A stretch of DNA of 64,000 nt, taken from positions 1,860,001 through 1,924,000 of the forward strand of contig JBLDXI010000017.1 in NCBI GenBank assembly GCA_047495785.1, given 5' to 3'. This document shows, piece by piece, positions 3,045 through 26,303 of this stretch. This DNA is from Lepidodermella squamata (Eukaryota; Animalia; Gastrotricha). The notes beneath the pieces were generated by a model. That model ran no database searches. It saw nothing but the letters and a program-made list of their open reading frames with translations, and was not told where the DNA came from. Each line of letters begins with the position of its first letter. Within the stretch, counting starts at the first letter, position 1. The position numbers were made by a program, and so were the translations under genes.

Positions 3045-3342
3045 AGCTATACGACTCATCTGGGATGAAATCATAGCTATGAATCATACTATAATAACAT
3101 TATATCATGTCAAGGTGTCATAACATCTTCATTCGTAATTGCTCATCCACCATCAATAAAAAAGCTTTTGTTTGTAGAAGCATAGTGGTTTTTTTGTTTA
3201 CCAGAAATGTATATAGGTATTATTGCCCTGGGCGCCAAAGCACGCACTAACGTGGGCGTTTAAAACGCTCCAGTTCCTCTGGCAAATAAATTGTTCCAGG
3301 TTCAGCTCAGAAGAAAGTTCTATATACCAAAAATTCAGAAGA

Positions 3343-4498
3343 ATGATAAACTGTCTTTTGGTTGTAGCCCTGGCAGGGCTGGCTTCAGCCCAAATTTTAG
3401 GCGACATGCAAGAGGGCCAAACGTCGAAAATTATTGGCGGCACTCGAATTTCCGATAAATCAAAGCATAAATGGATGGTCCTCATGGAAGGCATTCAACG
3501 CGTTTCTTTATTCAAAGACAAGTCCGCCTCGATTTTTTCATATTTTTCCTATTCTCAAATAATTTTTTATAGGACAACCTATTGCGGAGGAACGTTGATT
3601 GATAAAAAGTGGGTCATATCAGCCGCTCATTGTTACCTTGGCGACCCGTCGGTCTCGGATCCAAGCAAGTGGAAAGCTTCTGTAGGCACCCTGCACGAAT
3701 ACGACTGGGTTCACCGCTACCTGCTGAACCCTATTGGGTGGCTTATTCGCAAACCCGAATGGCAATCGTGGCGGCTTCAGGTCGACAAAATCTTCACGCA
3801 CCCTAAATTCGTCGATAACAGCACACGTAATAGAAAAATGCATTGCTTTTAGCTTAGTCGCTATTTCTTTTATTCTAGTTATGTTCGATAACGATATTGC
3901 TGTTTTGAAGCTCAAGGAAGAGGTAAAATTTCCTATAGACAAGCGAAAGGCTCTTTACTTGATTTTTCAGGCCCCAGTGGGAAGACACCCTTATGTAGGC
4001 ACCCTTGACCTGCCAACTGCGGGTGACACCAGGGTGCCAGAGCCGGGTAGCTACTGCACTGTAAGCGGTTGGGGCTGTACGGCCGATGGCGGCTCAGTCA
4101 CGGATCAAGAGGTTGAGGTCACCCTGCCCTTTTTGAGTCGAAGGTAATACAATTGTTATAGCTGCCTCCTCCTTAATTTTTCGCTCCTTACAATAGCGAC
4201 TGTTTGGCCTACTGGGGCCGCTTGACCGAAAATCAATTTTGCGCTGGTCGACCTGGAGAGGGTTAGCGATTTTCGAATTTTATATTATACTTGAAACTCA
4301 GTGATTTATGTATCTTCAGGGAAGTCAGTCTGTTCTGGAGATTCTGGCAGTCCGTTTGTGTGTAAAAATGCGACGAACAATTTCCTAGCTGGGATCGTTT
4401 CCTTCGCGAATAGGGGAGATCCAACGGCATTCCCGTCCGGTTTCCTTTACGTTGCTAAATACGTCGACTGGATCAAGCAGATCATGGCTAACAACTGA
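3343..4498 (+). CDS. Secreted S1A serine protease, chymotrypsin/elastase-type S1 pocket; 6 exons
   Basis: Signal peptide MINCLLVVALAGLASA, activation site K|IIGG, CGGTLI, SAAHC (His57), DNDIA (Asp102), SGWG, GKSVCSGDSGSP (Ser195; Ser at position 189). Five ~50-nt GT-AG introns at about 3522-3572, 3827-3878, 3923-3970, 4144-4196 and 4262-4319. Confidence 0.93.
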
Positions 4499-4643: not shown

Positions 4644-7600
4644 TTAAACTTGGTATGGCCTCGCGTATGGATCAGCTCCGTTCCATCCAAAATTACCACC
4701 GGGGCCGTAGTTGCAAACCTAATAGACATACTTAACGCATTAGAAGTGATTTGCAAATTTAAACTTTGACTTTACCAAATTATTTTCAATTCTTCCTTTT
4801 TCGCCACGGCAACGCGATTTCGCGCATCCGACAAAGAAAGTGTCAGCCCAGATAATTTGGGTGTAATGCCCGATAACGGCATCGTCTCTCAATTTTCCAA
4901 CACCATAACGCCAGTCTTTTACCTCAGAAGCCCAGTCTGCGAAATTGAAGTTATTAATTATTGGAAAAATTAAGGCGGATTAAATACCATCAATGCAATT
5001 AGTCCACGTTTGATTGAACCCGTAAGACCAGCACAAATTTTGTCCTACCTAAAATTCAAAATGTATATTTCTAAAAAGCCTCGTATCGATGTAAAATTTA
5101 ACATACCCATGACCATTCCTCTTTGCCTCCGCGAGCTGGCAAAGCTCGAGCTTCGCCTTTATTATGCTCGAAGACGCATTGCGCTGCAAGTTTAAATGGG
5201 AGTTTGAAAAAATTGAAAAATCTCGCAATTTCATCATTTACCTGCCCATCGCTCAGACTCTGAAAAAGATGTAATATAAATTTATAAAAAATTAATGTTA
5301 TTACAATGCTTACCAACTGCTAAGTCTTCATCCCAAGACAAATCAGGCATATATCTCGCCGGCGGATTAACTTGCTCTATCAAAAATACACACATTTTTA
5401 AATTTTACATTTCTAGAAAATTCGAACTTCGATAATAATTATGCCGGTCGAGGACTTCGCTAATCGATACTGGTTCAAGGTTGACCAAATTCGGCGAGTC
5501 ATTTAAACAAAGCGAGTGAGATGGATCCACGCCGTATCTGCATTGAGGCTAGATAATTTTCTGAAATTTTAAGGAGGAGTAGTTTTCGCTAAATGCCTCA
5601 CTCCAAGTTTCGGGGTAGAAAACATTCCAACTGCCGTCGGCGAAGAACGAACCGGTATGATTGGGGCAGGTAAGGTAGTTGTTGTTGGGGTGGTTTGGAC
5701 ACCCTGGCGAGCACCGCCAAGAGCTTTGTAAGGATATGCATAATATGCACCAGTATTCTCCTCATCAATATTTCCTATAGTTGCATAAAATTACAAAAGA
5801 AATCCTGCTAAATTTTGTTCCACATACCTCCTGGGGCGTAATTGCACACCTTATTTGGAAAAATGATTTGAAAAAATATTTTTTTGAATAATTCACTTCC
5901 TTACTATGGTGTAGTCCCACTTTGTACCCTGACATTGCGACTTCGCACACCTGATTTAAGAAAAATTTAGAAATTCATAATAATTAAGATACCTAATTAG
6001 GACTAACCCGACGTAATACGTTTTAGCGCTGATTATTTGAGTGTAATGTCCAACAACCCGTTTAGGATTCATAATTCCGTAGAACCAATCTGCCCGTTCA
6101 CCTGCCCAGCTATCAATCGCCCGCGTGACAGATACATTTCCAGTGTTCCAATACAAATTCTGGCCAACCCAGTCGTAGGCAAGACCAGTCGATCGGGCGG
6201 GAAGAGCGCGATTGTCACCTTCATCATGCCAAGTGGGACATGTGGCAGCCCACCGCTCTGCCGAAACTGCTAGATCTTCGTCCCACTGCAGATCAGGCAT
6301 AGACTCGGCGGGTGGTGAGACTTGACCTCGCCAATAGTTGTGACGAGATAGAGCTTCGTCCATAGAAATCGGCTCGAGATATACAAGGTTAGGACTATCG
6401 CCTTGGCACAGCGTATGAGGAGATGTTAGGCCGTAGCGGCATTGAGGCTTTAAAGTAAACATTGAGTTTAAATCAAATCTTAAAAATCTTCCTTAAAATT
6501 ATTAAGAGAATACCGAAAATTACCGAACCATCGGGTTTTTTCGGGTAAAATTATGGAAAATTAGTTTATTTGCCGCGTTTACCTACCCCTCGCTTAGGCG
6601 AACTGAATCTGATCGGTTTAGACATTAAATTGGGTTGCACTTGAGCCGGAGCTGAAGTCGGCCGTGGGGTAGTCGTCGTTGTTGTTGTTGTTGTTGTTGT
6701 CGTCGGCGTAGTCGTTGTAGTTGGACGAGTTGTAGGCCTAGTGGTAGTTGTCGAGGTGGTTGTAGTTGTCGTAGTAGTTGTTGTAGTCGTTGAAGTTCTC
6801 GTTGTAGGATAAGTCATCCTAAAAGTAGTAGTCCTCGTAGTCGCTTGTGAGGTTGTTGAAGTCGTCGGCGGAAGAGTTGGTGGTGGATTCGTCTGAACGG
6901 TCTCAGAACCAGAATTTATCGGCGCGATGGCATAAGGATAGGCATAGTAAAGCCCGTTATTTTCAGTGTCGTAATTACCGCCGGGACCGTAGTTACAAAC
7001 CTTGATAAGGGAAACATTTTTCAATCAGAAGTTTTCCCTGCCAAACTTACGTAGACGTAAGCCCATCTGCCTCGACATCTCGCTTTCGCACACCTGAATG
7101 ATGATAGCTGATTTTCACGACCCGTGTCAATAAAAAGCAATTTACCCAACAAATCGCGACCTGGCAGCTACAATTTGAGTGTAATGACCAACAACAGCAA
7201 TCGGCGACCGGATGCCATAGTACCAGTTACGACGCTCCGAGGCCCAGGCGTCGATGGCCGTTAAAAATGTAGCATTTCCGGAATTCCAATACACTGATTT
7301 AAAAAATGTGGAAAAATATGGAAACAAAATAAAAGCGGGGATTTTACAGTTTTGTCCGACCCAATCCCATGCTTCCTTGTTTCCATCTCGCTCAGGCAGA
7401 GCTCGGCTATCACTTTCGTCATGAGTTGTGGGACATGTACTCGCCCAGCTGGAATAATAATGAACAATGAGAGGTGAAATATTGAAGGCTTCAATAATTA
7501 CCCTTCAGCTATCGCAGCCAGGTCATCGTCATATTGCAAATCTTGCATGTCAATGGCGGGCGGCGTCACATTTCCTATTAAAAATCCGGAAAATCAGAAA

Positions 7601-8147
7601 AAAATCAATCATTTTTAAAGTTATAATACTTCGCCATAAATTGTGCTCGGCTAAAATATCCGATTTCGATAGCTTTTCGATTCCCAAGAAATCGGGCGAT
7701 GGGTCGACGCACATGGAATGTCTCGAGGAGAGGCCATATTTTTGGCATTGGCTCTTCTATATTTAGAAATAAATCTCGAAATAATGATATTATTTGAAAT
7801 AATCGTACCCTTTCATTATCTGAGATCGTTAATTTTGGTTGTCGGCAACTAGGTGGCTCTGTCCACCGCCCAGTTTGCTGGTTGCAAAAAACACGCGGAT
7901 CTCCGATCGGCAACTCGCCATTGTTGCAAATATAAGTCGCGAAATCAGTCCTGATCTCGTTCACGTCACTGTCTAAATCATTCCAGTTACTAACAGTTGG
8001 CCGCTCAACTGTTGACGTTAGACTAGCCGCATAGCCGCCATCGATCGCGGGTAAGCGACCGCAAACTGGCCGATCGTCAACGCGGGCGGATGACAGTCCA
8101 GCGGAAAACAAGGTTAAAATTGGCAAAAATAATATTTCACGGCTCAT
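4644..8147 (-). CDS. CAP gene A: signal peptide + Sushi/CCP + 3 CAP (SCP/Tpx-1/Ag5/PR-1) domains, with a Thr-rich linker
   Basis: MSREILFLPILTLFSAGLSSA signal. Sushi C-G-x-L-P...Y-I-C-N-N-G...C...W-T-E-P-P-S-C. Three sets of HN..R / WVGQN / GHYTQ / VCNY.PGGN joined by short GT-AG introns. Ends YARPYQV* at 4644. Confidence 0.85.
6664..6850 (-). repeat. Coding (ACN)n poly-Thr mucin-like linker in CAP gene A
   Basis: (GTT/GTA/GTC)n on the + strand, translated as TTTTTTTTTSTTTTRPTTRPTTTTTP in ORF 6566-7024. Confidence 0.85.
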
Positions 8148-8583
8148 TTTTAGAATTTTCTAAGGAAAAACAAATAAAATATCCAGGGCTATTTCGCTGC
8201 TTGTGACAGGTGCAATATGCATAATTATCAGCGTTTTATTTCCGCTCACGACCTTTATTGTATCTAATAATTAATCGTGCGAGAGATGATGATGGGAGCA
8301 AAAGAATGTCTGGCATTGTTGAGTTTTTATTGCTGACGCATCGTGATTTTGTTTTCATCACCTTAAATAGTGACCTGGGTCGTTCTAGAATAATAATTTT
8401 TTTGCATTGTTTATCTTACAAAAATACAGTTTTTCAGTTTTTCTAAACAGCAAAAACCGATGTTTTGATTCGTTTTTTAGTCGCAAACACGTCTGCCGAA
8501 TATTTACCCTGGATAAAAACCGTGGATGAAAAAAATATTGAAAAAAAATAAATTTAAGGAGGATCCATTACAAATTTTATTTC

Positions 8584-10945
8584 TCATTTTGTATCATAAG
8601 GTTTAGCGTAAGGATTGCCGCCAGGTGTAGAGGCTAAGTTTCCTCCCTCGCCGTAGTTACAAACCTGAAAAATATTTAATTTTCGCATTTTTTTATGGAA
8701 AATAAGAATTGCATACCAGGTTGTTTTCAATATCTCGACCGAGCGAACCTTTGCATCGAGATTTTCCGCAACCAACGAACAGAGTTTTCGCCCAAACGAC
8801 TTGGGTGTAATGACCAACCGTATTGTTGTTGAAAGCGCCGACGCCATATCGCCAACCTTTTGCCTCCTCGCCCCAAACTGAAGGAAAAAATGATGAGAAG
8901 AATAAAGTGATAAAAAATATTACAATCTATGCAATTAGTCCACGTCTGATTGAACCCGTATGACCAGCAAAGGTTCTGTCCAACCTGAGGAATCAACAGA
9001 AATAACGAAAAATAATCCTTAACGATGAGCCTTACCCAAGGCCAAGCTGGCTTATCGCCACGAACTGGTAAAGCTCTTGTATCCCGAGTGTCATGTTCGA
9101 ACTTGCACTGAGCTGAAAAATTCGAGACAAAATACAATGAAAAGACAGTTGCACCATCTTACCTGCCCATCTCTCCGCCTCTGTAAAATATGAGTGTTAA
9201 AATAATAGCAATTTTCAAAATTTCATCACTCACCAATACGCAAATCATCATCCCAAGCGATTTTCGGAATAGGAGGGGAAGCCGCTGGAACAACCCGGGC
9301 TGAATTCATCGATGGAAAATCAAAATAATTCCACATAAAATTGTCTTCCTAACCTCGGTAGTAGTTGTGCCGATCGAGAATTTCGCTTATTGAAGAAGGC
9401 TCTAAATTGATTAAATTCGGAGAATCTTCGAGGCACATCGAGTGTGGGTATGTCAGTCCATAGCGACATTGCGGCTAAAATTAAAATTGAACGCCCCACC
9501 TTAAAACGTAATAATAATATCTCACCCCTCTCAAAGGATTCGTCAAATCCCCTGTTGGAGCGGGAGGAGCCGTAAAAGTAGATGTTGGGACGGGGGGTGC
9601 CGTGGAAGAATCTGACGAGGGTGGGCATGGTGCTCTTGTCAACAATGTGGACAACATGGTACTTGTCGTAGTGGGTGGTAGTGTATTGGTTCCGTTTGCA
9701 ATCAGGTAAGGATATGCAAAATTATTGCCAGATTTTGATAAGTCAAAATTGCCACCAGGGCCGTAGTTGCAAATCTAATTAAGTAGGATTTTATTGAGTA
9801 CTAGAGGGATCCGATTAATCTTACCACCACTGTACCCCATTCACCCTTGCAGCGAGCCTTGGCACAGCTGAAAATTCAAATTTAATATAAAATTAACATA
9901 AAAATTGTGATTTTACCCGACAAATAGTGTACCAGCCGTGATCATCTGGGTGTAATGGCCTACCACTTGAGTAGGATTTTTGATGCCGTAATACCAGTCC
10001 TTCTTCTCTGCTGCCCATTTGTTGATAGCATCCATTACCGAAGCATCATCCGTGTTCCAATAAACTGGAAAAATTGTTAATAAATTCTTAAATTTAGCTT
10101 ATATTAACATACTATTTTGGCCGACCCAGTCGTAACGTGGCTTATCAGCATGGAGAGGTAGCACTCGATTTTGCGGCTCATCGTGATCGTTAGGACATGT
10201 AATCGCCCACCTTAAAAATATCGAAATTATCGAGAAATATTATTAGGTCATCCATTCATTACCCTTCGGCTGTTGATGCAAGATCTGGGTCATACCCTAT
10301 ATCGGGCATGTTAGCGGCTGGAGGGGAGACAGATCCTAATATGGGACTCACGATTAAGAGACAATCTCATTGCTCACAAATTTCTTACTCCTTAGGCTAT
10401 TATGGCTCTGTACTATATCATTCTGGGGAACTGGTTCAACTTTCACGAAATTGGGCGATGGTGTAGTGATACACATTGAATGGGACGCGGCCAGGGCGTA
10501 CTGCTGACAGGTGGCTTGCTGATAAATTTTCTTAATTTTTAAATTCCGCAAATTTAATATAATTTACCCTGCTTGATCCTACTGCTGGCGCTGGGGTGGT
10601 TGAAGTTGAGCTGTTTACTTGTTTATTAGGACAACATGATGATGGTGGTGGTGGCGGTGAAGGTGCGGGACAAGTCGGCAGGGTGGACCAGGTAGGGGTT
10701 CGGGCATCGCACGTAACTTGAGCGCACCCTGTAGGTGTTTGCCCGTTATTACAAGCGTACGTCACGACATCACTCCGAATATCAGATCCGTTCTGTTGTT
10801 TCTCAAATGTTGTAGTCATCGATAGGACGAAGCCATTTGGCAAGCGGGGAACTTTACCGCAAGCCGGGTCGTCGTAAATATCGGCTGCATAGGCCGCCGA
10901 AAAAATCGAGGCCACGAAAAAAATTGCAGTAGAGAGACAAGTCAT
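8584..10945 (-). CDS. CAP gene B: signal peptide + Sushi + 2 CAP domains
   Basis: MTCLSTAIFFVASIFSAAYA signal (ATG 10945). Sushi PACGKVPRLPNG...YACNNG...C...WSTLPTC. Two GHYTQ/CNY sets. Ends YAKPYDTK*. Confidence 0.85.
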
Positions 10946-11115
10946 ATTATATATTATATCATTTATTCGAGTGATTTTTATGGATTCAACTTGATACAGC
11001 ACTTGAGAACAAGTTTTTCTCGAAAAGTAAACATTGGAATAAAAATGACATGGAAAAAATAAACATTTGTCAATTTCAGTTTTTTTAGCGAGTAAAATAA
11101 ACGTCAGCTTTCAGC

Positions 11116-12863
11116 CTAATTTTGACTCGACATTCCAACAGCTTGGTAAGGATAGGCGAAGTATTGGCCGGAGTTGTTCGGATCAACGTTGCCTCCCGGA
11201 GCGTAATTGCAAACCTTGGAATTATAAAAAAAAACTCTCAAAACACCGGAAATGATGAAAAAAATTTATTACAATGACGACAGGCCATTCGCCTTTGCAT
11301 CTTCCTCTCGCGCACCTACATTTTAGAAAATTTGAAATATTCAGAAATTATAGAGAAAATCTCCTATACCCAACACTCTGAGTGACTGCAGAAATTATTT
11401 GGGTGTAATGCCCGACTACGCTGGTTGGGTTGCGGATTCCGTAGGTCCAATTAGCCTTCTCCGAAGCCCATTTATTAATTGCATCAACCACCGTTGCATC
11501 ATTATTTGTGGTCCAGTAAACTGTAGCGTTGGAAAAAATTGAGCCGAAGACGATTTTTTCGCAAAAAACCTACTGTTTTGGCCGACCCACGAGTACGCCG
11601 GCGTGTCACCCCTTGCTGGAAAGGCTCTGTTCGACTTGTCGTTATGATCGTTGGGGCAAGATGAGGCGAATCTGGAAAATCATGATAAATATAAGGAAAT
11701 TTTCATACTTTCAGCGGCCTACCCTTCAGCAGCTGCAGCCAAATCGTTATCGTAGACTAAATCTTGCAAATCAGAAGCTGGAGGGCTAACGCTACCTTAA
11801 AACGTAGTTCTTTTAGGTCAAACGATGAATTTTGCAGGAGAATCCTTACTCCTGTATCCATTATGAGTAGTTAGGACATCGTTAGCCGAAACGGGGTCAA
11901 GCGCTACGGAACTCGGCGAAGGTCCGAGGCACATCGAGTGGCTTTGGCTGAGGCCGAGCGATTTGCAAGCCGCTTGCTAGAGACATAGCACATCCATAAG
12001 TAAGCAGCTATAAACTTGTAACTTCGAGTGAACAAAAATCCGGAGAATCCGGAGATGGTGCTATCGGGTAAAAACCGAAAATTACCGAAATATCGGGTTT
12101 TTTCGGGTTTTTCTTGGTAAATTAAATTTTAATTTATTCCGCTTAACTTTGATAATTCGGGAAATTTTCAGGTAACAGGTAACAGGGAAATTCCAAAAAT
12201 ATTTGCAAAAATAATGGGACATGCAATGATGAAAATAAAAAAATTCTAATTTTTCGAAAAAGGTCAACTCACGCGCTCATTTATAGTCGACGGCTGTGAC
12301 CTTGGTGTGCTATCTGAAGTAGGGCTTAGATTTTGCTTATTTCCACCCCTTATAGTATTAGGCACCGCCGTTGTCGGAAGTTGCCGCGGTCTAGTCGTCA
12401 TCGTCCCTTGCGACAAGGCTCGGTCCGTTCTTACCGCCACCGGCTTAGTAGTAGTCGGTGGCATCGTGTTAGAAGCAATATTTCGATTGACTGTTGATCG
12501 ACTGCTAGCCATCATTGTTGACATTTTTGTTGTAGTAGTCCTCCTAGGCGTGGTGGTAGGCGGGGTAGTTGTCACGTCTCCACATACAGGTAGGTCCGGC
12601 CAGTCGGTTCCTTTCCGAGAGTCGCAAACCACCCTGGCCGAACCCGTTATCGGCGGCATTTTGTTATTGCACGCGTATTGAACGACATCGACTCGAGAGT
12701 CTTTACTTCTATCCGCGAAATTGTAATTGAAACTAGTCGTCACGTTTGCGACTACACCGTTAGGAATCTGCGGAATTTTGCCGCATGCTGGCCCTTCGAA
12801 GACATCTTCCGCGAAAGCGGCAGATTGGTAACTGATAAGCAAAAACACAACAGCGGCTAACAT
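11116..12863 (-). CDS. CAP gene C: signal peptide + Sushi + T-rich linker + 1 CAP domain
   Basis: MLAAVVFLLISYQSAAFA signal. Sushi PACGKIPQIPNG...YACNNK...C...WPDLPVC. CAP with RGDTPAYSWVGQN, GHYTQ and VCNYAPGGN...GMSSQN*. Confidence 0.85.
11986..12226. mobile_element. MITE family 2, degenerate intronic copy
   Basis: Degenerate ends (TAGCACATCCATAAGTAA ... TAATGGGACATGC). The internal motif AAAAACCGAAAATTACCGAA...ATCGGGTTTT is shared with 54422-54740, and a remnant is at ~6510-6560. Confidence 0.55.
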
Positions 12864-13074
12864 TTCAGGGAGGAATAAACTCGACGAATGGTGAAGTTTT
12901 TACCGGCTTTTATTCAATTATTTGCAAAGCGCGTCTAGGCATCCTGAACTAAAAAAATGAGACGGGGATGACACCCCGCCGTACCACGCGACGAGACTGG
13001 AAACAAAGGTCGAACCTATACAAACATGTTTTATTTATCAGCCGGGTGTTTTTTTACATCAAATAAAACTAGGT

Positions 13075-14675
13075 TTAATGGAAAAAATTGACAACTAAGA
13101 TGACAATGAACAGCAGCATCGTGTGATCGGGCAAAAAAGTTGGGACACAATTTATTGATATAATGCTAGCTACCGTTGGGACTTGAACATTATTAGGAAC
13201 GTTAACGCTGGTAACAATTTCGCTTTCTTCTTTGACTATATCTGGAATCGTCGTTGGTATTCGATAAGTCACTCGGGGCAATCTAGAAACTTGATTAGGA
13301 TTGAGGTTCGGGTTGAAGGTAGTGAGGGTGCCTAGTCCAATATTTGAGCCATTATTCGATCTGCGTAAAAATACTTTATTTCTATCAATAGCTTGGGGAG
13401 AAGTCGGGGATTACGGAATTCTGGCTGTTGTTCGAAAGGAGCTGCCTGATACAATTTGCTGGGTTGAAGTTGGGAGAAGCCTAGGAGAGCCACTGCTAGC
13501 TGATTGGGTTATCTCATAAGGCCGGGCGAATTGTTGGCCAGTATTCGATGGATCCACATTTCCACCCGGGCCGTAGTTACAAATCTTCACAAAATTAAAT
13601 AGGACTAGCTATAGATTAAGGTCAAATTACCACTATGGTTTGATTTCTGCCGCGGCATCGAGCCTTTGCGCATCTAGGGAGACATTAATTTAGTTGACAA
13701 TATTTTTATTAAGGTGTCAATTACCCAACAGCCATTGTGTTGGCTGTAATGATTTGTGTGTAGTGGCCAACATATTTAGGAGGGTTTTGGATTCCGTAGT
13801 ACCAATCGTTCTTCTCCGAGGCCCAAGTTTCAACCGCCATTTGCTCTGTAGCATTATCCAAAGCATTCCAGTAAACTTCCAAGGGTTACAAAATATTTTA
13901 GAAATTAGGAAAAAATAATTGAAGCCTTACTATTCTGACCGACCCACGGGAAAGGAGGCCTGGTGCCTCTACCAGGTAGGGCTCGATTTAACGGGCTATC
14001 ACTATCCTGAGGGCAAGTGCTCGCCCAACCAGCTGCAGTGGCTGCTAGATCGTCGTCCCAAACCAAATCTCGCATATTCACCGCCGGAGGATTGACATTT
14101 CCTATTCCAGATAAAAGATCAACCCAGCTTAAAATTTCCGTGGCTACAACTTACTTCGATAGCTGTTATGATTCCTTACTATATCTTCGACTGAAACTCG
14201 TTCAAGGGCTATGAAGCTTTCAGACGCATTAGCGCACATTGAATGATTTGATGGTAGGCCAAGAAAGACACACATCGATCTCTAAAAATTCATGTTTTTA
14301 GTCAGTTTTCCTATAACTTCGAAATTGCTATACCCGATCTGATGTAGAGAACCATCCTTGGCCAGTTGGCGCGTCAGTCGTTACTTGATTGATTATAATT
14401 GGGTCACAAGTTGGCGTCTGGCTCCACTTTGGATTCCACGGAGGGTTGCAGATAACGCTTTCCGGCCCATTCGGCTTCTTGCCGTTGTAGCAAGCGTACG
14501 TGATAGTAACGGAGCGGAATTCAGGCTTTGAGCCGTAATCCGTTCTCAGGGACCGTATGAAAGCGTTCGGCACTTCAGGAGCAGCTCCGCAGGCTGGGAG
14601 CTCTAAAATGACCACATCGGCTGAAACATCAGCTGAGGAGAGACAGCAGATGAATAATAAAAAGATTAGGACCAT
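13075..14675 (-). CDS. CAP gene D: signal peptide + Sushi + 1 CAP + S/T/P stalk + C-terminal hydrophobic tail (probable GPI signal)
   Basis: MVLIFLLFICCLSSA signal (ATG 14675). Sushi PACGAAPEVPN...YACYNG...C...WSQTPTC. CAP motifs WVGQN, GHYTQ, ICNYGPGGN. The spliced tail ends ...HTMLLFIVILVVNFFH*. Confidence 0.82.
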
Positions 14676-15240
14676 ATCTGCACAGGATTTTCCCGAAAAT
14701 TCGGTTGATGATGACGAATTGGGCTTTTGGCACGGCAGCAACCACCAAGGACACTTTAGTTGAGCAAATAACAGAAGCACGTCTGGATTTTTTGTTAGGA
14801 TAGTAGGGCAAAACACGCATGTTTATTCTGAAAAAATTATATCTGATCACAAAAAATTGGCCATGTGATAGCAATCAAGTACAGTTTGAAACTAAAAGAT
14901 GTTGAAATGTCCTTTTTCGGAATTATTTTAAAATAATTAACAATGCTGGATCTAAGCAGTGATGATGCGACCTAGTTCAAAAAATTAAGCAGAATTTTTT
15001 AAATATTTTTCTTATGAATTCTAATTATCATTTTTCCATTTAAATGGACATATTTAGGGATAAAAATGACCTCTAATAAAAACACCGAAAAATTAAACTT
15101 CAGAGGTGTGATCAAATGAACTCATTTTTTTCTCGCTCTATTCCGCATGAAATCTTTATTTGCTTTTGCAAGTCAAAATATAATGAAAAACGAGGCTCCT
15201 CATCTTTGCTTTCTCAAAATAAGTTTATACAGGCAGTGCG

Positions 15241-17316
15241 TTACTGCGCGTACCAAACAGTCTCGTAAGGATAAGCATAAGGATTCGACCCATCAGGCGG
15301 TACAACATTTCCGCCGGCGCCGTAGTTGCAAACCTGTTTGATAAAAGAATTCAAATCAAAATAGCGACTTGGATCAATTCGACTTACTAAATTATTTTCG
15401 TACCCGCCCCCGATACCCTGGCAGATGGACATGCCGCAACCTACGTAATGCGTCTCGGCCCAGATAATTTGCGTGTAATGGCCGACTTTATTCTTGTTCA
15501 CTGAACCTACGCCATACATCCAGTCCTTGACTTCAGCGGCCCAATCTACGCAGATAAAATAGCTTTAACTTCACAATTCAAAATTCGGAAATTCAATAAC
15601 CATCAATGCAAGCTGTCCAAGATTCGCTTATTCCGTAGGACCAGCATAGATTTTGCCCGACCTTGGGATTTTCCATAAAAATAAATTCGAATTTGAAAAT
15701 TATTGAAAAAATATTACCCATGGCCAGGCAGGTTTATCGCCACGATCCGGGAGAGATCGTTCTGCCCGCTTGTTGTGCCTGAATATACATTGAGCTGGAA
15801 TAAATTCAAATTTTCTCAAGCAATTTAGGATAAAATTGCCGAAAATTACCAGCCCATCTTTCAGCCTCTGGAATTTCAACACAATATTTTAAGATTTTTA
15901 TATAAAATTGGGAAAATACTGACCTATTTGCAAATCTTCGTCCCATTTCAATTTAGGCATAAAAACGGCTGGTGGGTTCAGCATTGACCTGTAGTAATTG
16001 TGCCTATTCAATATCTCGCTGATTGATGAAGGCTGAAGAGAGATCAAGTTCGGTGAATCATCCAGACACATCGAATGCGGCTTCGACAGGCCGTATCGGC
16101 ATTGAGACTGTTAATCAATAATATTATGAAACAGGGGTACTTCGAATCGATTTCCTTACTCCATACGACGGAACAGTAAGGTCCTGGAGCGGGGACGGTG
16201 TGGATGGGAGAAGGGGTTCGGCCTTCTTAATTGGTTGTTGAAAGAGCGAGAACTCATCCACTTCAAAATGCTGTTTTTTCAACTGATTTTCCAGCCTATT
16301 TTTCAAAGGCTGGACCACATATCCCTGGGTAGTAGCTTCAGACGAGCTAATGTAATAAGGCATAGTTTTCGTAGCAAAAGTTTGAGGTGGACGGGATTTA
16401 GGAGTTGTTTTATAGGCAACGCTAGGATCCAGCTGGTAAGGATAGGCAAAGAAAGCCCCAGAGTTATCCCGATCGTAATTCCCTCCAGGTCCGTAGTTGC
16501 AAACCTATCACAAACAGAATTGAGCTGATGTTGAATGATAATGGCTTAAACTGACAAAAACCATGACGATCCCGGTTGGACTGCCACATCGAGCCTTAGC
16601 ACAGCCGACGTAGAGCGTTTCTTGGCTGACGATTTGTGTGTAATGGCCAACAACGGTTACAGGGTCTTTGATGCCGTAGTGCCAATCGTTCCTTTCCTCG
16701 GCCCATTTCAAAATGGCCTCGATTATCGACGCATTCCCAGAGTTCCAGTATACTTCAAAGGAAAAATTGTGCTCGAATTGGAGTAGAAATTGGAAAATTA
16801 ATTACTATTCTGGCCGACCCAGTCCCATTGCGGCTCCCCGCCTCTTGCGGGTAGAACTCGGTCTGCAACGTCGTCATGGTCTAAAGGACAAGTGCTGGCC
16901 CATCTGATTCAAATAAAACTTATTTCAGGTGAAAATTCGCGAAATGACCATGGAAATACCCTTCAGCCATAGCCGTCAAATCGATGTCGTAGCGTAGGTC
17001 CGGCATATGCAGCGCAGGTGGGGTGACGGTCCCTGAAATAAATTGTGGATACCTTCATCGAGTACTCGGAAATAGGATTCAACTTACTCCTGAAGTAATT
17101 ATGAGTGAGTAGAACATCCTCAGCTGATACCGGTTCGAAGCCTTGAAAAACCGAGGAAGGCGAAGTTATGCACAGCGAGTGTGACGGGGGCAGGTTGTAT
17201 ATTTGGCATAGGGTTTCCCTATTAATGGACCCTCCCATCGGGTTGAACATCCCGCCGTATACATAGTTGGTCGAATAAAGTGATATTGATAAAATTTTCA
17301 GAGTTAGACTCGCCAT
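15241..17316 (-). CDS. CAP gene E: signal peptide + 2 CAP domains (no Sushi)
   Basis: MASLTLKILSISLYST N-terminus, then LCQIYNLPPSHSLC...THNYFR, two GHYTQ motifs, and ends VCNYGAGGN...YPYETVWYAQ*. Confidence 0.85.
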
Positions 17317-17717
17317 TTCTAGTTAATTTTGTGTTGAACTAGTAACTAGTGAGGAAATGTCTCTTAGCGAGGATGTTTGCATGGCGATAGGATACAGACG
17401 CCACGTGCAACAAGCGCGTGTTTTTTTCTGGAAAATAAGCGTAATGAAGGTCATTTCCGAGCATGTTTATTACATTTCAGGGCATTGCAAGTCACAAATC
17501 GCAGCTGAACTAGGTAATTTTGATTACTGGAAATTAGATTGTTAAAACTACCGTAAAGCGGAATCTTTGGACACTTCATGCTGTGCAGTTTGCAGCGAAG
17601 GGGAATACCATTGATAAAATTACCATTGATGAGGCCACTGCATATGCAAATAAGCGTCCAACATTTCCAGCTAATTAACCCAAGTTTTAGACAAGCACAT
17701 TTCAAAATGCACCAAGG

Positions 17718-17890
17718 CAGACCGCCATAACAGCAAATGCCCAAAACAGCAGGCGCGACAAAACAGCAAATTTTTAAACTTGCGACATAACAGCAGAAAC
17801 TTGGTGCTGTTACATATAATCAAGTGTTCGCTGTTTTGTCGCGACTAAAAAAGTTGCCGGTTTGTCGCATTTGCTGTTTTAGCGCCGACC
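17718..17890. repeat. Palindromic element built from ACAGC(AAA) subrepeats (MITE-like)
   Basis: GCGACAAAACAGC (17755-17767) is inverted as GCTGTTTTGTCGC (17830-17842). AACAGCAAATGC is inverted as GCATTTGCTGTT. Confidence 0.65.
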
Positions 17891-19432: not shown

Positions 19433-20213
19433 GGTTTTAATTTGAGAGAGTGAGAGGAATGGAAAAAAATCCAGCTTAAAGCGGTGCATTTATATCCGCG
19501 GTTTTTTTTATCTTATCAAAAGTGATGAGGACCCCGTTCCGTCCATAAGAATAGCTGATAAACTCGGTGCTTTGGCTAGAAAAAATGACTTATTCATTTT
19601 TATTGACCGATTTTAAAACTGCTCCAGTGTCTTACAATGTATCAATTGACATTATAGGAAAAATGATGACCAAATTTTACATAAAAATTCGCTTCCTAAC
19701 AGGAATACTAACAGGAATAGCAAGGACAAAATCCTGATTTTCGAGTGAAATAAATCCGAATTTTTTTAAATTCGAAAAAGCCAATTCCGGTAAGGTAAAA
19801 TGGATTATTGTCCAAATTTAATCCGTACAAACGTAATCATTGTCACGGTATATAGGATATTTTCGTGGCTGAATCCTTGGTTTCATCTCTCAGCTCTGGT
19901 CAGTGGTCATCTAGAAAGTAAAAAAAAATGGCAGCAATTAACTGTACACACGTGCGCAAGATTACGAGCGGCCCCTCGTGCCGTGATTCCTATTAAAACA
20001 ATGGATTGACAGAAAAAAAACTGCGTTGAAATGAGCAAACTTTACCTTTTATTCAATCCTATAATACTATCATTTTAATGGACCGAACGAGGCAAAAAAT
20101 GCAGGTTATAAAGCTAATAACACCACTTACGGGTTAAATTTCAATAGCAGTGAAACTACTATAAGGATTTGACACTTCTCAGAATTATAGCTTCGAACAC
20201 GGCAGCGTTGTAG

Positions 20214-23311: not shown

Positions 23312-26303
23312 ATGAGAAAATTTGTTATCTTGTTGCTTTTTGCTCTGGGCCTTGCAGAGGCTGTTAAAATCGATCGAAATCACAACAGCCAAAAACGCAA
23401 AAATTTCCAGAAAAAACCAATGAAACAAGCGAGGCAATCAAACGTCGTATGTTTTAACATCAATTTTTATTTAATTTCAATTTTTCCTCCTATTCAGATT
23501 ACAGGAAATCCACTTGAAAAGGCGACTTTACGCTACATTCAACAAAGGGTATATAGGAGATTAAAGCTGGGTAAATTTCGTCATAATTTTTTAATATAGA
23601 GAGACAGGTGTCAAAGTTACGGCCTTGAATGGAAGAACTCGATGTGTCTAGGGCCGTCCTCATTTTTCCGAAAATACGAAGCCATATCCGAAAACGAGGT
23701 GTTAGAAGCTCATAATAATTACCGACGTAAATTTCCACCATAAAATTTTGATTCTCGAGTTTTTGTTTTGCTTTTCCAGAAAATGCTAACGTACCAGACC
23801 TGCAGTACGACCCTGATTTAGCTGCTCTAGCCGAGGGGTAAGTTTTACGGGTTTAATATAACCATCCTAATTGAATATTTTAAGGTGGGTGAGTACGTGC
23901 CAAAATGGATCCGATAGCCCAGCGAGTAGGACCCTTCCTGAGCGGAGAGATAAGCCAGCTTGGGACAACATTGGCCAAAACTGTAATCTTTATACCTTAT
24001 CAATTTTAAATAAAATAAAAAAATTATTTAGTCCTCTGGGCTTGGGGCGATACGTCGTTGACGAATGCCGTCGATTATTGGGCTTCGCAGCGATCCGATA
24101 ATTCTCAAGGCGCCGCAAAGCCTTTCATCCAGATCACTTCGGCATCGACCATCTACGTCGGCTGTGCGAAAGCGTTCTGCAACAAGGAATCTTCAATGAC
24201 TACAGTTTACGTAAAATATAAGAAATTTATTCAAAAATGGGTTAAATATCCCGTAAAATTGAAGGTCGTGTGTAACTATGCGCCTGGGCTAAATTCGAGC
24301 GATGATTTAACAACAAAGCTTCCTCCGCCGCAACCTAGGACGGCGTTGCTTCAGACGACTCGACGTCCTGATGTTTCAACGCCTTCACGATCATTAGGGA
24401 CTACGAAATCATCGTCGGTAGTGACATCGCCGCCTTTCAGCGCTCGAACACTAGTATTCGAACCGCGACCAGTACAGCCGCCTCCTTTGCAAGATAATTC
24501 TCGAAAATTCTCCACGCCTCGAAGAGGGGTAGGATAATTTAATTAGTTAAGGATTTAATAAGGTGCAAGTTTGATATATAGCCTCAATGTAAATATGGCT
24601 TGAATCCGCCTCATAACATGTGTCAAGAGGACTCGGCATCCTTAATCGAACTCGAGCCAGTTCCTATTCTGGACGTGATCGGGGATCATAATTTCTATAG
24701 GTCCCGGGTGACTCCCCGAGCGAAGTCCATGCCTCCACTGGCATGGGACGAAGATTTAGCGATCGAAGCTGAAAGATGGGCAGGTATAAGACGTCCTAAA
24801 ATTCCCGAAAATTGTCATGAATTCAGAGAATTTTAGCTCAATGTCGGTTCGAGTCGAATTTGAAGGACGAACGACCTCTACCTCCACGTGGCGATAAAGA
24901 TGAATGGGCTTGGGTAAATTTCTTTATTTTGCGAATAATTTAATTTAATGAATTAATTTTTTTAGATTGGCCAAAATATGTGTTGGGGCTGGGGATTTAA
25001 CAGATCCTGGACTGAATGTATTGATGGTATATTTTATATAATACTTTAAAGGCTGCTATTAGGTCTCAATTTGTCGAATAGATTGGGCCTCCGAGCGTAA
25101 TGATTGGCAATATGGCATCGGACCTATCAATAATAACCCTGTTGGTCACTATACACAAATGATCTGGGCAGATACCTTGTACATCGGTTGCGGGAAAGCG
25201 AGATGTAGCCGTCGGGGTGATGTAGTCGAAGACACTATTTTGGTTTGTAAAATATTAGAATTTCACCTGATTTTCATTAATAATTTTTTCAGGTGTGTAA
25301 TTACGGCCCTGGCGGTAATATAGCCTGGGCCAATCTCAACGCCTATGCGAGACCGTACGAAAAATATGTCCCAAACAATTTATTCACCCAGCCTAAAAAT
25401 GGGGTAAAATTATTATTAATTTTTTGATTTTCCAATGATTTTTCATCTTTCAGCCTCAGTGCCGTTACAATTTAGTTTATCCGCATACATTGTGCCTGAA
25501 TGATTCAGCTAAACTTATAGCCTTGGAACCTGCTCCTAAATACGAGATAATCGTGAGGCAAAATTTGTACAGAGGTTGGGAAGAAATTTCTCAGTCTGGC
25601 CGGGAATCCTATAAGTTATTGTTTTATAGCTCAAGTCGATCCGCCTGCGAATAAAATGCCAAAGCTTCGATGGGACGACGATCTTGCAATCGAAGCCGAA
25701 CGATGGGCAGGTTAGGGAATGAAACTGAAAACTGGCTCCAGAAATTTTCATTATTTTCATTATAGCCCAGTGTAAATTTGAAAATGATTTAAAATCAAAC
25801 CGGCAACTGCCAGCTCGAGGCAGCGTCCAGGCGTGGCCTTGGGTATAAAAAACTGACTTGGATTTTATACTTTTTGCTACGTATTATTTCGACCTCATCA
25901 GGTGGGGCAAAATATGTGCTGGTCGATTGGTTCAAATCGGTCATGGTCGGATTGCATAGATGGTAAGAAGCAAAAACGATGAGATCGATCACGATTCATT
26001 AATTTCTTTCAGATTGGGCCTCTGAGGCCATCGATTGGCAGTATGGTATTGGTGCTCTGAACGAAAACCCTGTTGGACATTACACGCAAATGATTTGGGC
26101 CGACACGCTCTACATAGGATGCGGAAAGGCGCGATGTCGTAGGACTGACAACCGGGGCGAAGACACTATTTTGGTAAAAAAAGGAAACAAATTAAAAAAT
26201 ATCTTCGTAAATTTTGATAAATATGTTTCAGGTCTGCAATTATGGCGAAGGTGGAAATACGGATGTAGCTGGCGGAAATCCTTATGCTAAGCCCTATGAA
26301 TAA
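23312..26303 (+). CDS. CAP gene F: signal peptide + 3 CAP domains (first degenerate)
   Basis: MRKFVILLLFALGLAEA signal. Domain 1 has IGQN but AKPFIQI in place of GHYTQ. Domains 2-3 have GQN(M/I)CW, GHYTQMIWADT and VCNYG. Ends YAKPYE* at 26303. Confidence 0.82.

What the first reader, a model, noticed from the sequence alone, without database searches (positions are those of the whole stretch)
4644..17316. Tandem array of Sushi-multiCAP genes with combinatorial architecture
Seen: five head-to-tail genes 170-570 bp apart with architectures Sushi-CAPx3, Sushi-CAPx2, Sushi-CAP, Sushi-CAP-GPI-like and CAPx2, plus a CAPx3 gene at 23312. That is 12 CAP domains, most visibly preceded by a C-x2-[YF]-G-L-x3-H-x-[ML]-C module reminiscent of the antigen-5 N-terminus. 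Established: CAP proteins bind sterols/lipids and are recruited into venoms, parasite secretions and reproduction; double-CAP ASPs occur in nematodes; Sushi domains mediate complement and adhesion contacts. I know of no described N-terminal Sushi + 1-3 CAP family. Inference: a lineage-specific family of soluble and membrane-anchored effectors.
Basis: partly seen in the sequence, partly recalled or inferred. Interest (0 to 1): 0.8.

Follow-up and report, generated by a model that had tools for sequence, protein, structure and literature searches.

The report
Tandem Sushi-CAP secreted protein genes
A small invertebrate genome carries six neighbouring genes for secreted proteins that join one complement-type Sushi module to one to three CAP (venom-allergen-type) modules on sugar-rich stalks; I found this combination described nowhere, but it is built from ordinary parts and its function is untested.

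Summary
Window 4644-17316 (minus strand) holds five head-to-tail genes 170-565 bp apart, and a sixth lies at 23312-26303 (+). Together they carry exactly 12 CAP domains. Four genes start with a signal peptide and one divergent Sushi/CCP module.

New points:
- The CAP units are of two types. Type I is always first and type II is distal, a split with 100/98 tree support.
- The Sushi exon and every CAP unit are bounded by phase-0 introns, so units can be gained or lost in frame.
- All 12 units have Gln where the metal-binding CAP tetrad has a Glu.
- A related organism in two metagenome assemblies has the same Sushi-CAP-I-CAP-II gene, with Sushi and the first CAP exon in one ORF.
- This genome has at least five further CAP-containing Sushi loci. 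The scan already reported one of them (s1-401998) on other DNA of this genome.

Multi-CAP proteins with up to 10 domains already exist in public data, so only the Sushi-CAP combination appears undescribed. The verdict is a real, lineage-restricted variant of a known kind. The function, probably non-enzymatic extracellular binding, is inferred.

The parts
4644..8147 (-). Gene A, 18 exons, 833 aa: signal peptide, Sushi, CAP-I (A1), long Thr/Pro mucin stalk, hybrid CAP (A2), CAP-II (A3)
   Evidence: Model. RNA joints 7093/7146, 7293/7348, 7448/7502 and 7756/7809 (cut positions corrected). Pfam CAP on exons.
7845..8063 (-). Sushi/CCP module of A. It has four Cys, a Trp, and a long insert in the hypervariable loop.
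   Evidence: One search gives the coordinates. Pfam Sushi scores 14.4 bits, below the cut-off. The four-sequence profile hits DAF, factor H and CR2.
6926..7753 (-). CAP unit A1 (type I, 6 Cys)
5722..6447 (-). CAP unit A2, a hybrid. The N-terminal half is type-II-like and the C-terminal half and intron pattern are type-I-like. It is mostly one 440-nt exon.
   Evidence: Pfam CAP 58.3 bits. PDB triflin 1.9e-14. Its placement in the tree shifts.
4647..5548 (-). CAP unit A3 (type II, 8 Cys), including an 18-nt micro-exon at 5242-5259
8584..10945 (-). Gene B, 14 exons, 565 aa: signal peptide, Sushi, Pro/Ser linker, CAP-I (B1), S/T/P linker, CAP-II (B2)
   Evidence: Model. RNA joints 8664/8717, 9115/9234 (with 15 letters of the micro-exon in between), 9299/9354, 10210/10263 and 10518/10568.
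10670..10861 (-). Sushi/CCP module of B
   Evidence: Pfam PF00084 22.4 bits, above the 20.7 cut-off, E 1.6e-4, covering profile positions 1-56/56
9700..10515 (-). CAP unit B1 (type I)
8590..9474 (-). CAP unit B2 (type II), with an RNA-supported 18-nt micro-exon at 9163-9180
11116..12863 (-). Gene C, 7 exons, 393 aa: signal peptide, Sushi, about 100-aa S/T/P stalk, CAP-I (C1). All six introns are seen in RNA contigs.
   Evidence: joints 11214/11273, 11315/11370, 11520/11574, 11671/11723, 11795/11850 and 11976/12273. One 278-nt contig spans the 296-nt intron between the Sushi/stalk exon and the CAP exon, with 125 letters on the shorter side.
12582..12785 (-). Sushi/CCP module of C
   Evidence: No Pfam hit. 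The AlphaFold2 model has pLDDT 93. It aligns at VIA Z 5-6.5, over 55-58 residues spanning the whole model, to single CCP modules of beta2-GPI, factor H, CR2, DAF and MASP-2.
11140..11973 (-). CAP unit C1 (type I)
13075..14675 (-). Gene D, 7 exons, 429 aa: signal peptide, Sushi, CAP-I (D1), S/T-rich region, C-terminal hydrophobic tail
   Evidence: Model. No RNA was laid on this gene.
14406..14591 (-). Sushi/CCP module of D
   Evidence: Aligns with A-C at 32-38% identity, with invariant Cys, Pro, Tyr-x-Cys, Trp and Pro-x-Cys. No Pfam hit on its own.
13510..14278 (-). CAP unit D1 (type I; the first tetrad His is replaced by Ser)
13078..13122 (-). C-terminal 15-residue hydrophobic tail of D, with no cytoplasmic residues after it. 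It is a candidate GPI-attachment signal.
   Evidence: Kyte-Doolittle 11-residue maximum is 3.36, against 0.1-0.7 in the other five genes. The omega site was not testable here.
15241..17316 (-). Gene E, 11 exons, 508 aa: CAP-I (E1), linker, CAP-II (E2). It has no Sushi and only a weak candidate signal peptide. Its 5' end is unverified.
   Evidence: Model. No Sushi remnant or clear signal-peptide exon lies between 17317 and 18100.
16430..17214 (-). CAP unit E1 (type I)
15259..16107 (-). CAP unit E2 (type II), with micro-exon 15850-15867
23312..26303 (+). Gene F, 18 exons, 698 aa: signal peptide, basic linker, degenerate CAP-I (F1), S/T/P linker, CAP-II (F2), CAP-II (F3)
   Evidence: Model. No RNA was laid on this gene.

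Best explanation
This is a real, transcribed, tandemly duplicated family of secreted modular glycoproteins.

The ancestral plan is: signal peptide, one divergent Sushi/CCP module whose hypervariable loop is lengthened into a longer beta-hairpin, a Pro/Thr/Ser-rich (probably O-glycosylated) stalk, an antigen-5-like type-I CAP domain, and then zero to two type-II CAP domains.

The Sushi exon and each CAP unit are cassettes bounded by phase-0 introns. Tandem gene duplication plus in-frame gain or loss of whole cassettes therefore gives the observed set: Sushi-CAPx3, Sushi-CAPx2, Sushi-CAP, Sushi-CAP-hydrophobic tail, CAPx2 and CAPx3.

The proteins most likely act outside the cell as non-enzymatic binding proteins. 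On this reading the Sushi module docks on a protein or glycan partner, and the CAP domains offer lipid/sterol- or protein-binding surfaces. Their central cavity lacks the full metal-binding tetrad.

Five members are soluble and one (D) is probably held on the membrane by a GPI anchor.

Shown: the gene structures, the splicing of A-C, the domain identities, the positional CAP types, and conservation in a related species and at other loci. Inferred: glycosylation, the GPI anchor, and all statements about ligands and biological role.
For: - Splicing: RNA contigs of run X1 show 14 GT..AG introns, including the Sushi-to-CAP joints of A, B and C. There are no RNA contigs in the A/B (8200-8599) and C/D (12800-12999) gaps.
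- CAP identity: Pfam CAP on the exons. The A2 exon hits triflin at 1.9e-14, and also natrin and GLIPR1. The AlphaFold2 model of the relative's orthologous unit has pLDDT 92 and Foldseek E about 1e-13 to CRISPs and Sol i 3.
- Sushi identity: Pfam passes its cut-off for B. The profile hits only CCP proteins in PDB, with DAF at 2e-8 over positions 3-68. The fold model aligns to CCP modules at Z 5-6.5.
- Positional types: first-position and later-position CAPs form two sides of a branch with 100/98 support. With eight more units added, including the relative's two, CAP-I has 98/94 and CAP-II 95/96 support.
- Cassettes: the Sushi exon and every CAP unit start and end in phase 0.
- Tetrad: H-Q-E-H in 8 units, with further losses in D1, F1, F2 and F3. 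Gln aligns with the Glu of GEN in triflin and GLIPR1 and of GES in natrin.
- Conservation: metagenome contigs L001 and L002 encode SP-Sushi-CAP-I-CAP-II, with Sushi and the first CAP exon in one ORF. That organism's eIF2A is 70% identical to this genome's.
- Signal peptides in A, B, C, D and F, S/T/P-rich blocks in A, B, C and F, and D's hydrophobic tail.
- Lipid binding without a tetrad has precedent: SmVAL4 lacks the tetrad yet binds sterol, and the sterol site (the caveolin-binding motif loop) is separate from the tetrad (PMC4921858).
Against: - No functional data of any kind.
- Only genes A-C have RNA support, and that comes from assembled contigs of a run whose RNA nature is a guess by the tool. 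The spliced joints argue that it is RNA.
- E has no convincing signal peptide, and F1 is degenerate, so part of the array may be decaying.
- The Gln-for-Glu change is shared with many of the closest database CAPs (consensus 'GQN'). It is therefore a clade trait and not a special adaptation here. It does not by itself prove loss of metal binding.
- The GPI signal is judged from hydropathy only.
- The organism is unidentified, so 'lineage-restricted' rests on the failure of my searches to find the architecture elsewhere.
Confidence: 0.7

Rival explanations
1. The Sushi-CAP architecture is already widespread in animal proteomes. It only looks rare because my searches were narrow: the top 150 of 1333 CAP hits, length-limited word searches, and full-text papers only.
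For: - CAP is fused to many other extracellular modules among the nearest relatives, each seen once: Reeler, CUB, ShK, F5/8C, fn2, SEA, LDLa and Kunitz. Domain shuffling onto CAP is therefore common.
- Sushi is very abundant in this genome, with at least 126 exon matches.
- An InterPro or CDART query could not be run.
Against: - No Pfam Sushi hit in the 15 top hits scanned individually. Among the 25 of 28 families listed for the 54 longest remaining hits, Sushi is absent; the three unlisted families each have at most one member.
- No ESM Atlas cluster of 50 or more members near P0154 or P0020 carries both families.
- No paper with a fusion was found.
Confidence: 0.25
2. Part of the array is decaying. 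On this view E (no Sushi, no clear signal peptide) and the first unit of F are relics, not working variants, so the 'combinatorial' series partly reflects loss.
For: - E's N-terminus has a hydropathy maximum of only 1.63, and no upstream signal-peptide or Sushi exon was found.
- F1 has lost GHYTQ and two or three tetrad positions, and sits on a branch of 1.9-2.2 changes per column.
Against: All six models keep open reading frames through 7-18 exons with canonical splice sites. E1 and E2 keep all six and eight Cys respectively and the H-Q-E-H residues.
Confidence: 0.2
3. The CAP domains are enzymes or metal-dependent effectors, like the protease activity reported for the cone-snail CAP Tex31, and not passive binders.
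For: - The closest named relatives include an oyster 'cysteine-rich venom protein Mr30-like'.
- PMC4921858 cites a serine-protease activity for Tex31.
- Eight units keep three of the four cavity residues.
Against: - The conserved cavity Glu is Gln in all 12 units, and four units lose more.
- No catalytic mechanism is established for CAP domains in general (my own knowledge).
Confidence: 0.1
4. The Sushi and CAP exons belong to separate genes, and the fusion is a reading artefact.
For: None was found. Gene spacing is so tight (170 bp between C's stop and B's start) that mis-joining was worth testing.
Against: - RNA joints link the Sushi exon to the CAP exon within A, B and C.
- No contig crosses the gaps between genes.
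- The relative has one ORF covering both.
- The Sushi exons end in phase 0 without a stop codon, and the CAP exons lack a start codon and signal peptide of their own.
Confidence: 0.03

Closest known systems
Multi-CAP proteins of molluscs and other invertebrates in public databases: Octopus vulgaris CAI9730330.1 (6 CAP, 1934 aa), Ostrea edulis XP_048767633.2 'cysteine-rich venom protein Mr30-like' (2 CAP), Haliotis asinina XP_067656171.1 (2 CAP), and unnamed metagenome proteins with up to 10 CAP
   Same: - These are the best sequence matches to the A2 exon, at 33-38% identity.
- They have several CAP domains in one chain.
- The same clade traits are present: an N-terminal C...H-x-x-C module and GQN in place of GEN (consensus).
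   Different: No Sushi module was found in them by Pfam. It is not known whether they have the two positional CAP types.
Antigen 5 / venom allergen subfamily of CAP (Ves v 5, PDB 1qnx; Sol i 3, PDB 2vzn)
   Same: - They have an N-terminal extension with Cys ... His-[Thr/Ser]-x-Cys before the CAP core.
- The unit model aligns over about 210 columns to Sol i 3 and Ves v 5, against 166-170 for snake CRISPs.
- Neither they nor these genes have a C-terminal Crisp/ICR domain.
   Different: Antigen 5 proteins are single-domain, have no Sushi or mucin stalk, and keep the GEN glutamate (my own knowledge for the last point; the PDB alignments show GEN in CRISPs and GLIPR1).
Nematode double-domain ASPs (Na-ASP-1, PDB 3nt8)
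   Same: Two covalently linked CAP domains in a secreted protein. This is a structural precedent for two CAP cavities facing one cleft (PMC4921858). Foldseek matches it at 1e-8.
   Different: It is only distantly related (22-23% identity), has no Sushi and no mucin linkers, and is limited to two domains.
Sushi/Kunitz-like/mucin/CAP cluster of the same genome (earlier scan finding s1-401998), and metagenome proteins P0018 and P0020
   Same: - Same organism or a near relative.
- Signal peptide, N-terminal Sushi-like module, mucin stalk, and a C-terminal CAP of the same GQN clade.
- Sushi and CAP exon hits interleave on G000:C1:1.35-1.43 Mb.
   Different: Those proteins carry a Kunitz-like module between Sushi and CAP and a single CAP. 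The four Sushi modules here form their own subgroup: E 1e-27 to 1e-33 against the profile built from them, with the next best hit at 4e-9.
Tandem arrays of SCP/TAPS (CAP) genes in insects and flukes, e.g. 16 genes in 53 kb in Lucilia cuprina (PMC7694928)
   Same: Head-to-tail arrays of secreted CAP genes arising by local duplication, with single- and double-domain members.
   Different: In Lucilia 26 of the 27 SCP/TAPS proteins are single-domain, and the one double-domain protein is listed on a different scaffold from the array. No Sushi is mentioned, and no positional CAP types.
Vertebrate CAP proteins with an added adhesion or lectin module (CRISPLD1/2: CAP + LCCL)
   Same: A CAP domain coupled to a different extracellular binding module. 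These were the nearest named clusters by protein-language-model features to P0020 (low scores of 0.77-0.79).
   Different: The partner module is C-terminal and is LCCL, not an N-terminal Sushi. They have a single CAP.

Membership tests
CAP superfamily (Pfam PF00188) | Sequence match to the family profile above its curated cut-off | tested here: met
   Exon pieces score 58.3, 32.5, 30.5 and 22.2 bits against a cut-off of 21.1; the A1 exon 7145-7504 scores 20.5, just below it. The genome-wide scan lists the window's units above the cut-off.
CAP superfamily (Pfam PF00188) | Alpha-beta-alpha sandwich fold | tested here: met
   This was tested on the relative's single-exon orthologous unit (P0004:103-299), because the window's own units are spliced and have no reference. 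The model has pLDDT 91.9. Foldseek gives E 7e-14 and TM 0.70-0.74 to pseudecin, natrin and Sol i 3.
CAP superfamily (Pfam PF00188) | CAP1 (GHYTQ-type) and CAP2 (CNY-type) signature motifs | tested here: met
   GHYTQ in 11/12 units (lost in F1). CNY[GA]xG[GL]N in 12/12.
CAP superfamily (Pfam PF00188) | Prototypical cavity tetrad His-Glu-Glu-His that binds divalent cations | tested here: not met
   H-Q-E-H in 8 units. D1 and F2 have S-Q-E-H, F3 has N-Q-E-H, and F1 has S-Q-Q-gap. Gln aligns with the Glu of GEN in triflin and GLIPR1 and of GES in natrin. The tetrad is typical but not required for membership: SmVAL4 and HpVAL-4 lack it.
Sushi / CCP / SCR module (Pfam PF00084) | About 60 residues with four Cys, an invariant Trp, and the Pro and Tyr/Phe-x-Cys consensus | tested here: met
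   Invariant C, G, P, Y-x-C, C, W and P-x-C in all four. The modules are 62-73 residues long because of an insert between Cys1 and Cys2.
Sushi / CCP / SCR module (Pfam PF00084) | Match to the family profile above its curated cut-off | tested here: inconclusive
   B scores 22.4 bits, above the 20.7 cut-off. A scores 14.4 bits. C and D give no hit. A profile of the four hits only CCP proteins in PDB (80 at E<=1; DAF 2e-8, factor H 4.5e-11).
Sushi / CCP / SCR module (Pfam PF00084) | CCP beta-sandwich fold | tested here: met
   Gene C's module has pLDDT 93. The top 46 rows of the VIA second look are all single CCP modules, at Z 4.1-6.5 with 52-58 of 72 residues aligned across the whole model. Foldseek E-values alone are weak (0.24 and up), as expected for a 72-residue query.
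CRISP subfamily (CAP + hinge + Crisp/ICR domain, PF08562) | C-terminal cysteine-rich Crisp/ICR domain after the CAP domain | tested here: not met
   Each unit ends ...CNYGPGGN...PY and then runs into an S/T/P linker or a stop codon. The exon after A1 (6569-7024) has no Pfam family.
Antigen-5-type CAP | N-terminal extension with a disulfide-forming Cys ... His-[ST]-x-Cys segment packed on the CAP core | tested here: inconclusive
   The sequence pattern is present in 12/12 units. The structural alignment to Sol i 3 and Ves v 5 spans 209-219 columns, against 166-170 for CRISPs. No residue-level superposition or disulfide geometry could be read from the tool output.
GPI-anchored protein (gene D only) | C-terminal hydrophobic signal preceded by a short spacer and a small omega residue, with no cytoplasmic tail | not testable with these tools
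   A hydrophobic 15-residue tail ends the protein (hydropathy 3.36), and small residues (S, N, C) lie 9-12 residues upstream (read from the sequence). No GPI predictor or experiment was available.

The most novel reading that the evidence does not exclude
Sushi-CAP proteins may form a private extracellular recognition system of this animal lineage. On this reading the variable Sushi hairpin chooses the target. The fixed CAP-I plus CAP-II pair forms a composite ligand cleft, as the two domains of Na-ASP-1 do. The GPI-anchored member (D) and the soluble members would act as a receptor and decoy or opsonin set. This would be a domain solution to immunity or gamete/prey recognition not used by studied animals.
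Probability: 0.1. Interest if true: 0.6.

Novelty: new variant of a known kind. Interest (0 to 1): 0.38.

Why it matters
CAP proteins are found across eukaryotes, in venoms, parasite secretions, sperm maturation and plant defence, yet how they act is still poorly understood.

This family offers a natural dissection of the problem. Its CAP domains are (a) tied to a recognisable targeting module, (b) split into two conserved positional types, and (c) present in soluble and probably membrane-anchored forms.

If the Sushi partner or the CAP ligand can be found, it would show what a CAP domain is recruited for when it is aimed at a target.

The phase-0 cassette structure is also a clear example of how exon shuffling and tandem duplication produce a graded series of architectures.

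Against this, the parts are ordinary, such lineage-specific shuffles are common in invertebrate genomes, and nothing here bears on a long-standing open question.

Tried and rejected
1. My first splice-graph gene finder over-spliced. A stiffer intron penalty fixed most of it. I hand-fixed four further junctions by paralogue comparison: A2 and A3 starts, D exons 2-3 and the F1 intron.
2. The look-up of encoding contigs for the neighbouring 462-aa gene, tried in the hope of seeing annotated gene models, found nothing on record.
3. A word search with the A2 exon (146 aa, candidates 80-255 aa) gave no hit at 1e-5. With the relative's 221-aa Sushi+CAP ORF it found only itself. Both are blind to longer proteins.
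4. Organism identification failed. An eIF2A word search returned only the metagenome relative, and the run and organism names are coded.
5. The JGI metagenome scan with clade-specific CAP patterns found 257 pattern matches, but none was confirmed.
6. Searching for a Sushi remnant or a signal-peptide exon upstream of E and F found nothing.
7. My own Sushi HMM found only P0018 among the 150 CAP relatives and missed the divergent Sushi-like module that I see by eye in P0020. That HMM's negative results therefore carry little weight, which is why Pfam was run as well.
8. ESM Atlas look-alikes scored below 0.8 and are leads only.
9. I did not use contig depth to rank expression, because the tool warns against it.
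10. The joined (spliced) proteins were never sent to any search or fold tool. They were assembled only inside the sandbox for local alignment, trees and phase counts.

Full report
**What is there.** The window comes from a 121-Mb animal assembly (G000:C17:1,860,001-1,924,000) with very short introns. Stop-to-stop frames on the minus strand between 4.6 and 17.3 kb show repeated CAP hallmarks (GHYTQ, CNYGPGGN). Four N-terminal exons have a signal peptide followed by a four-cysteine module.

I built spliced models with a small splice-graph finder trained on RNA-confirmed junctions and corrected four junctions by paralogue comparison. The models are:
- A: 8147..4644, 833 aa.
- B: 10945..8584, 565 aa.
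- C: 12863..11116, 393 aa.
- D: 14675..13075, 429 aa.
- E: 17316..15241, 508 aa.
- F: 23312..26303 on the plus strand, 698 aa.

All introns are GT..AG and 46-59 nt long, except one of 139 nt and one of 296 nt. The gaps between coding regions are 436, 170, 211 and 565 bp. A six-frame HMM scan finds no further CAP or Sushi piece in the window.

**Are Sushi and CAP one transcript?** One public run (X1) holds a third of the sampled words of the region, and its contigs skip the predicted introns at CT..AC boundaries. It therefore behaves as RNA.
- Its contigs join the Sushi exon to the first CAP exon in A (7756/7809), B (10518/10568) and C (11976/12273). In C one 278-nt contig spans the 296-nt intron.
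- All six introns of C, four of A and five of B are seen, including an 18-nt micro-exon in B.
- No RNA contig lies in the A/B or C/D gaps.
- Only 6 kb could be laid, so D, E and F have no RNA evidence.

**Domain identities: CAP.** Pfam PF00188 hits the CAP exons at up to 58 bits. The single large exon of unit A2 matches snake-venom CRISPs and GLIPR1 in the PDB, with triflin at 1.9e-14. The window's own units are spliced and have no reference, so I folded a complete single-exon unit from a related organism. That model has pLDDT 92 and gives Foldseek E about 1e-13 to pseudecin, natrin and Sol i 3.

**Domain identities: Sushi.** Only gene B's Sushi passes Pfam's cut-off (22.4 against 20.7 bits). 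A is sub-threshold and C and D give nothing. The four are clearly homologous, however, at 32-38% identity with invariant Cys, Pro, Tyr-x-Cys, Trp and Pro-x-Cys. Their joint profile hits only CCP proteins among solved structures: DAF at 2e-8 across the whole module, and also factor H and CR2. A model of gene C's module, the one Pfam misses, has pLDDT 93. It aligns at Z 5-6.5 over 55-58 residues to single CCP modules, and all of the top 46 rows are CCP modules. The extra length sits between Cys1 and Cys2 and is modelled as two long strands, that is, an extended hairpin.

**The module before each CAP.** All 12 units start with C-x(1-3)-[YFLI]-[GAN]-[LV]-x(3-5)-[HN]-x-[ML]-C. The unit model aligns to the antigen-5 proteins Sol i 3 and Ves v 5 over 209-219 columns, against only 166-170 for CRISPs, which lack that N-terminal extension. 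The module is a trait of this whole CAP clade and not something new here.

**A positional rule, not free combination.** The aligned units fall into two types.
- Type I has 6 Cys and the signatures ...AEGWASTCP..HD... and GQNIYWN.
- Type II has 8 Cys and the signatures PQCRYGL, AERWAAQC.FEH and GQNLCWSYG...CID.

The first CAP of all six genes is type I. Five of the six later CAPs are type II, and A2 is the hybrid exception described below. In a maximum-likelihood tree, first-position and later-position units form the two sides of a branch with 100/98 support.

I then added eight units from other loci and from the related organism. CAP-I (98/94) includes that organism's first unit and the first unit of a gene on contig C14. 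CAP-II (95/96) includes the relative's second unit. The two types also have different intron patterns:
- Type I exons are 127/73/98/148/43 nt.
- Type II exons are 121/60-63/18/77/61/161 nt.

A2 is a hybrid. Its N-terminal half reads like type II, while its C-terminal half and its one retained internal intron are type-I-like. Its tree position shifts between the two analyses.

**How the series arises.** The Sushi exon and every CAP unit begin and end at phase-0 introns. Any whole cassette can therefore be duplicated or deleted without breaking the frame. Together with tandem gene duplication, this explains the graded set of architectures. That the cassettes are phase 0-0 is shown. That this is how the series arose is inference.

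**Cavity residues.** The prototypical CAP cavity has a His-Glu-Glu-His tetrad that binds divalent cations (PMC4921858). Here the Glu of the GEN motif is Gln in all 12 units, and D1, F1, F2 and F3 lose more. The same GQN is the majority state among the 54 relatives aligned, so it is a clade trait. CAP proteins without the tetrad can still bind sterols through a separate loop, as SmVAL4 does (PMC4921858). I therefore favour a non-enzymatic binding role, but this is inference.

**Other features.**
- A, B, C, D and F have clear signal peptides.
- A, B, C and F have S/T/P-rich blocks. A's is about 115 residues and largely poly-Thr, typical of O-glycosylated stalks.
- D alone ends in a 15-residue hydrophobic tail with nothing after it (hydropathy 3.36). 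This fits a GPI signal, but I could not test it.
- E has no Sushi, no Sushi remnant upstream and only a weak hydrophobic start, so its 5' end is open.

**Relatives elsewhere in this genome.** The genome has at least 63 CAP exon matches and at least 126 Sushi matches, and they co-occur at several loci.
- C14:405-415 kb holds three tandem genes: Sushi-CAP-CAP, Sushi-CAP and Sushi-CAP.
- C13:3.79 Mb holds a Sushi x2-CAP gene.
- C13:2.80 Mb holds a Sushi x6-CAP gene.
- C1:1.35-1.43 Mb is presumably the cluster that the scan reported earlier as Sushi/Kunitz-like/mucin/CAP (s1-401998).

The four Sushi modules of this window are a distinct subgroup. They score E 1e-27 to 1e-33 against the profile built from them (so these scores are partly circular), and the next best hit in the genome is 4e-9.

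**Relatives in public data.** The big representative search with the A2 exon gave 1333 hits. The best named ones are molluscan: an Octopus vulgaris protein with 6 CAP domains, an Ostrea edulis 'Mr30-like' protein and a Haliotis asinina protein. There is also a krill protein with 4 CAP domains plus SEA. Unnamed metagenome proteins reach 10 CAP domains. Multi-CAP chains are therefore not new.

None of the 15 top hits that I scanned one by one shows a Pfam Sushi match. In the pooled scan of the 54 longest remaining hits, Sushi is absent from the 25 of 28 families listed. Two metagenome proteins (P0018, P0020) are Sushi-Kunitz-like-CAP by eye or by my own profile.

Hit P0004 (56% identical) turned out to be a fragment of a gene on two metagenome contigs, ENA ERZ23486764 and ERZ27332993. 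That gene encodes a signal peptide, a Sushi with the same long insert (CGVLPKIDGGYAGSL against A's CGRLPAIDGGYAASL), a Pro-rich linker, CAP-I, a mucin linker and CAP-II. Its Sushi and first CAP exon lie in one ORF. That organism's eIF2A is 70% identical to this genome's. The architecture is therefore older than the split between the two organisms.

**Literature.** Three full-text searches found CAP tandem arrays (Lucilia cuprina, PMC7694928) and secretomes containing both Sushi and CAP families as separate proteins (PMC3744408, PMC7853314). None reported a Sushi-CAP fusion. InterPro could not be queried, so I cannot claim that the architecture is absent from databases.

**Verdict.** It is out of date on multi-CAP proteins, and function remains untested. 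I rate this a new variant of a known kind and only moderately interesting. The scan had already met the Sushi-CAP theme elsewhere in this genome.

**Limits.** All database work was done exon by exon or on single-exon relatives. The organism could not be named.

Noticed in passing
window 18101-19489 (-): An intronless 462-aa gene with an N-terminal hydrophobic signal. Its only Pfam matches are bacterial-type PQQ/BamB-like beta-propeller families (PF13360, 38.6 bits). No exact copy is on record in the public gene collection. This is odd for an animal genome and could be a horizontal-transfer candidate.
   Followed up: partly
window 20214-22334 (+): An astacin gene whose 500-aa ORF holds one complete astacin domain and the start of a second. 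The next ORF (21789-22334) continues with the C-terminal half of an astacin domain, so this is a two-astacin protein.
   Followed up: partly
window 5242-5259, 9163-9180, 15850-15867 (-): A conserved 18-nt micro-exon encoding (E/Q)-(S/A)-ERWAA lies inside the type-II CAP units A3, B2 and E2. The B2 copy is seen in an RNA contig as 15 letters between two joints. F2 and F3 have lost the flanking introns.
   Followed up: yes
window 11033-11190: An RNA contig of gene C's 3' end reaches 11033, only about 90 nt from gene B's start codon at 10945. B's promoter must therefore overlap or closely abut C's 3' UTR.
   Followed up: no
window 17454-17819 (-): A 122-codon Cys-rich open frame upstream of gene E is built from repeated GCTGTT(T/A)TG-like words. 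It has no similarity to Sushi or CAP. It may be a low-complexity repeat or a regulatory array.
   Followed up: no
G000:C14:405000-414999 (L004), G000:C13:3786000-3795999 (L005), G000:C13:2802000-2811999 (L006): Further Sushi-CAP genes of the same genome: a second tandem array of three genes (Sushi-CAP-CAP, Sushi-CAP, Sushi-CAP), a Sushi x2-CAP gene and a Sushi x6-CAP gene. The C14 array lies about 13-20 kb from eIF2A, the gene that also neighbours the relative's Sushi-CAP-CAP gene.
   Followed up: partly
window 7000-12999, DNA run X2: A 2024 DNA run of a differently coded organism covers the region with many differences. Of the 40 shown (out of 257), 31 fall in introns or between genes and 9 in exons. 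This hints at purifying selection, but the shown rows are a selected subset.
   Followed up: no
window 3223-4147 (+), 26516-28594 (+), 63051-63977 (-): The array sits among other genes for extracellular or membrane proteins: trypsin-like protease exons, an ANF-receptor-family ligand-binding protein followed by hydrophobic segments, and a CUB-domain exon.
   Followed up: partly
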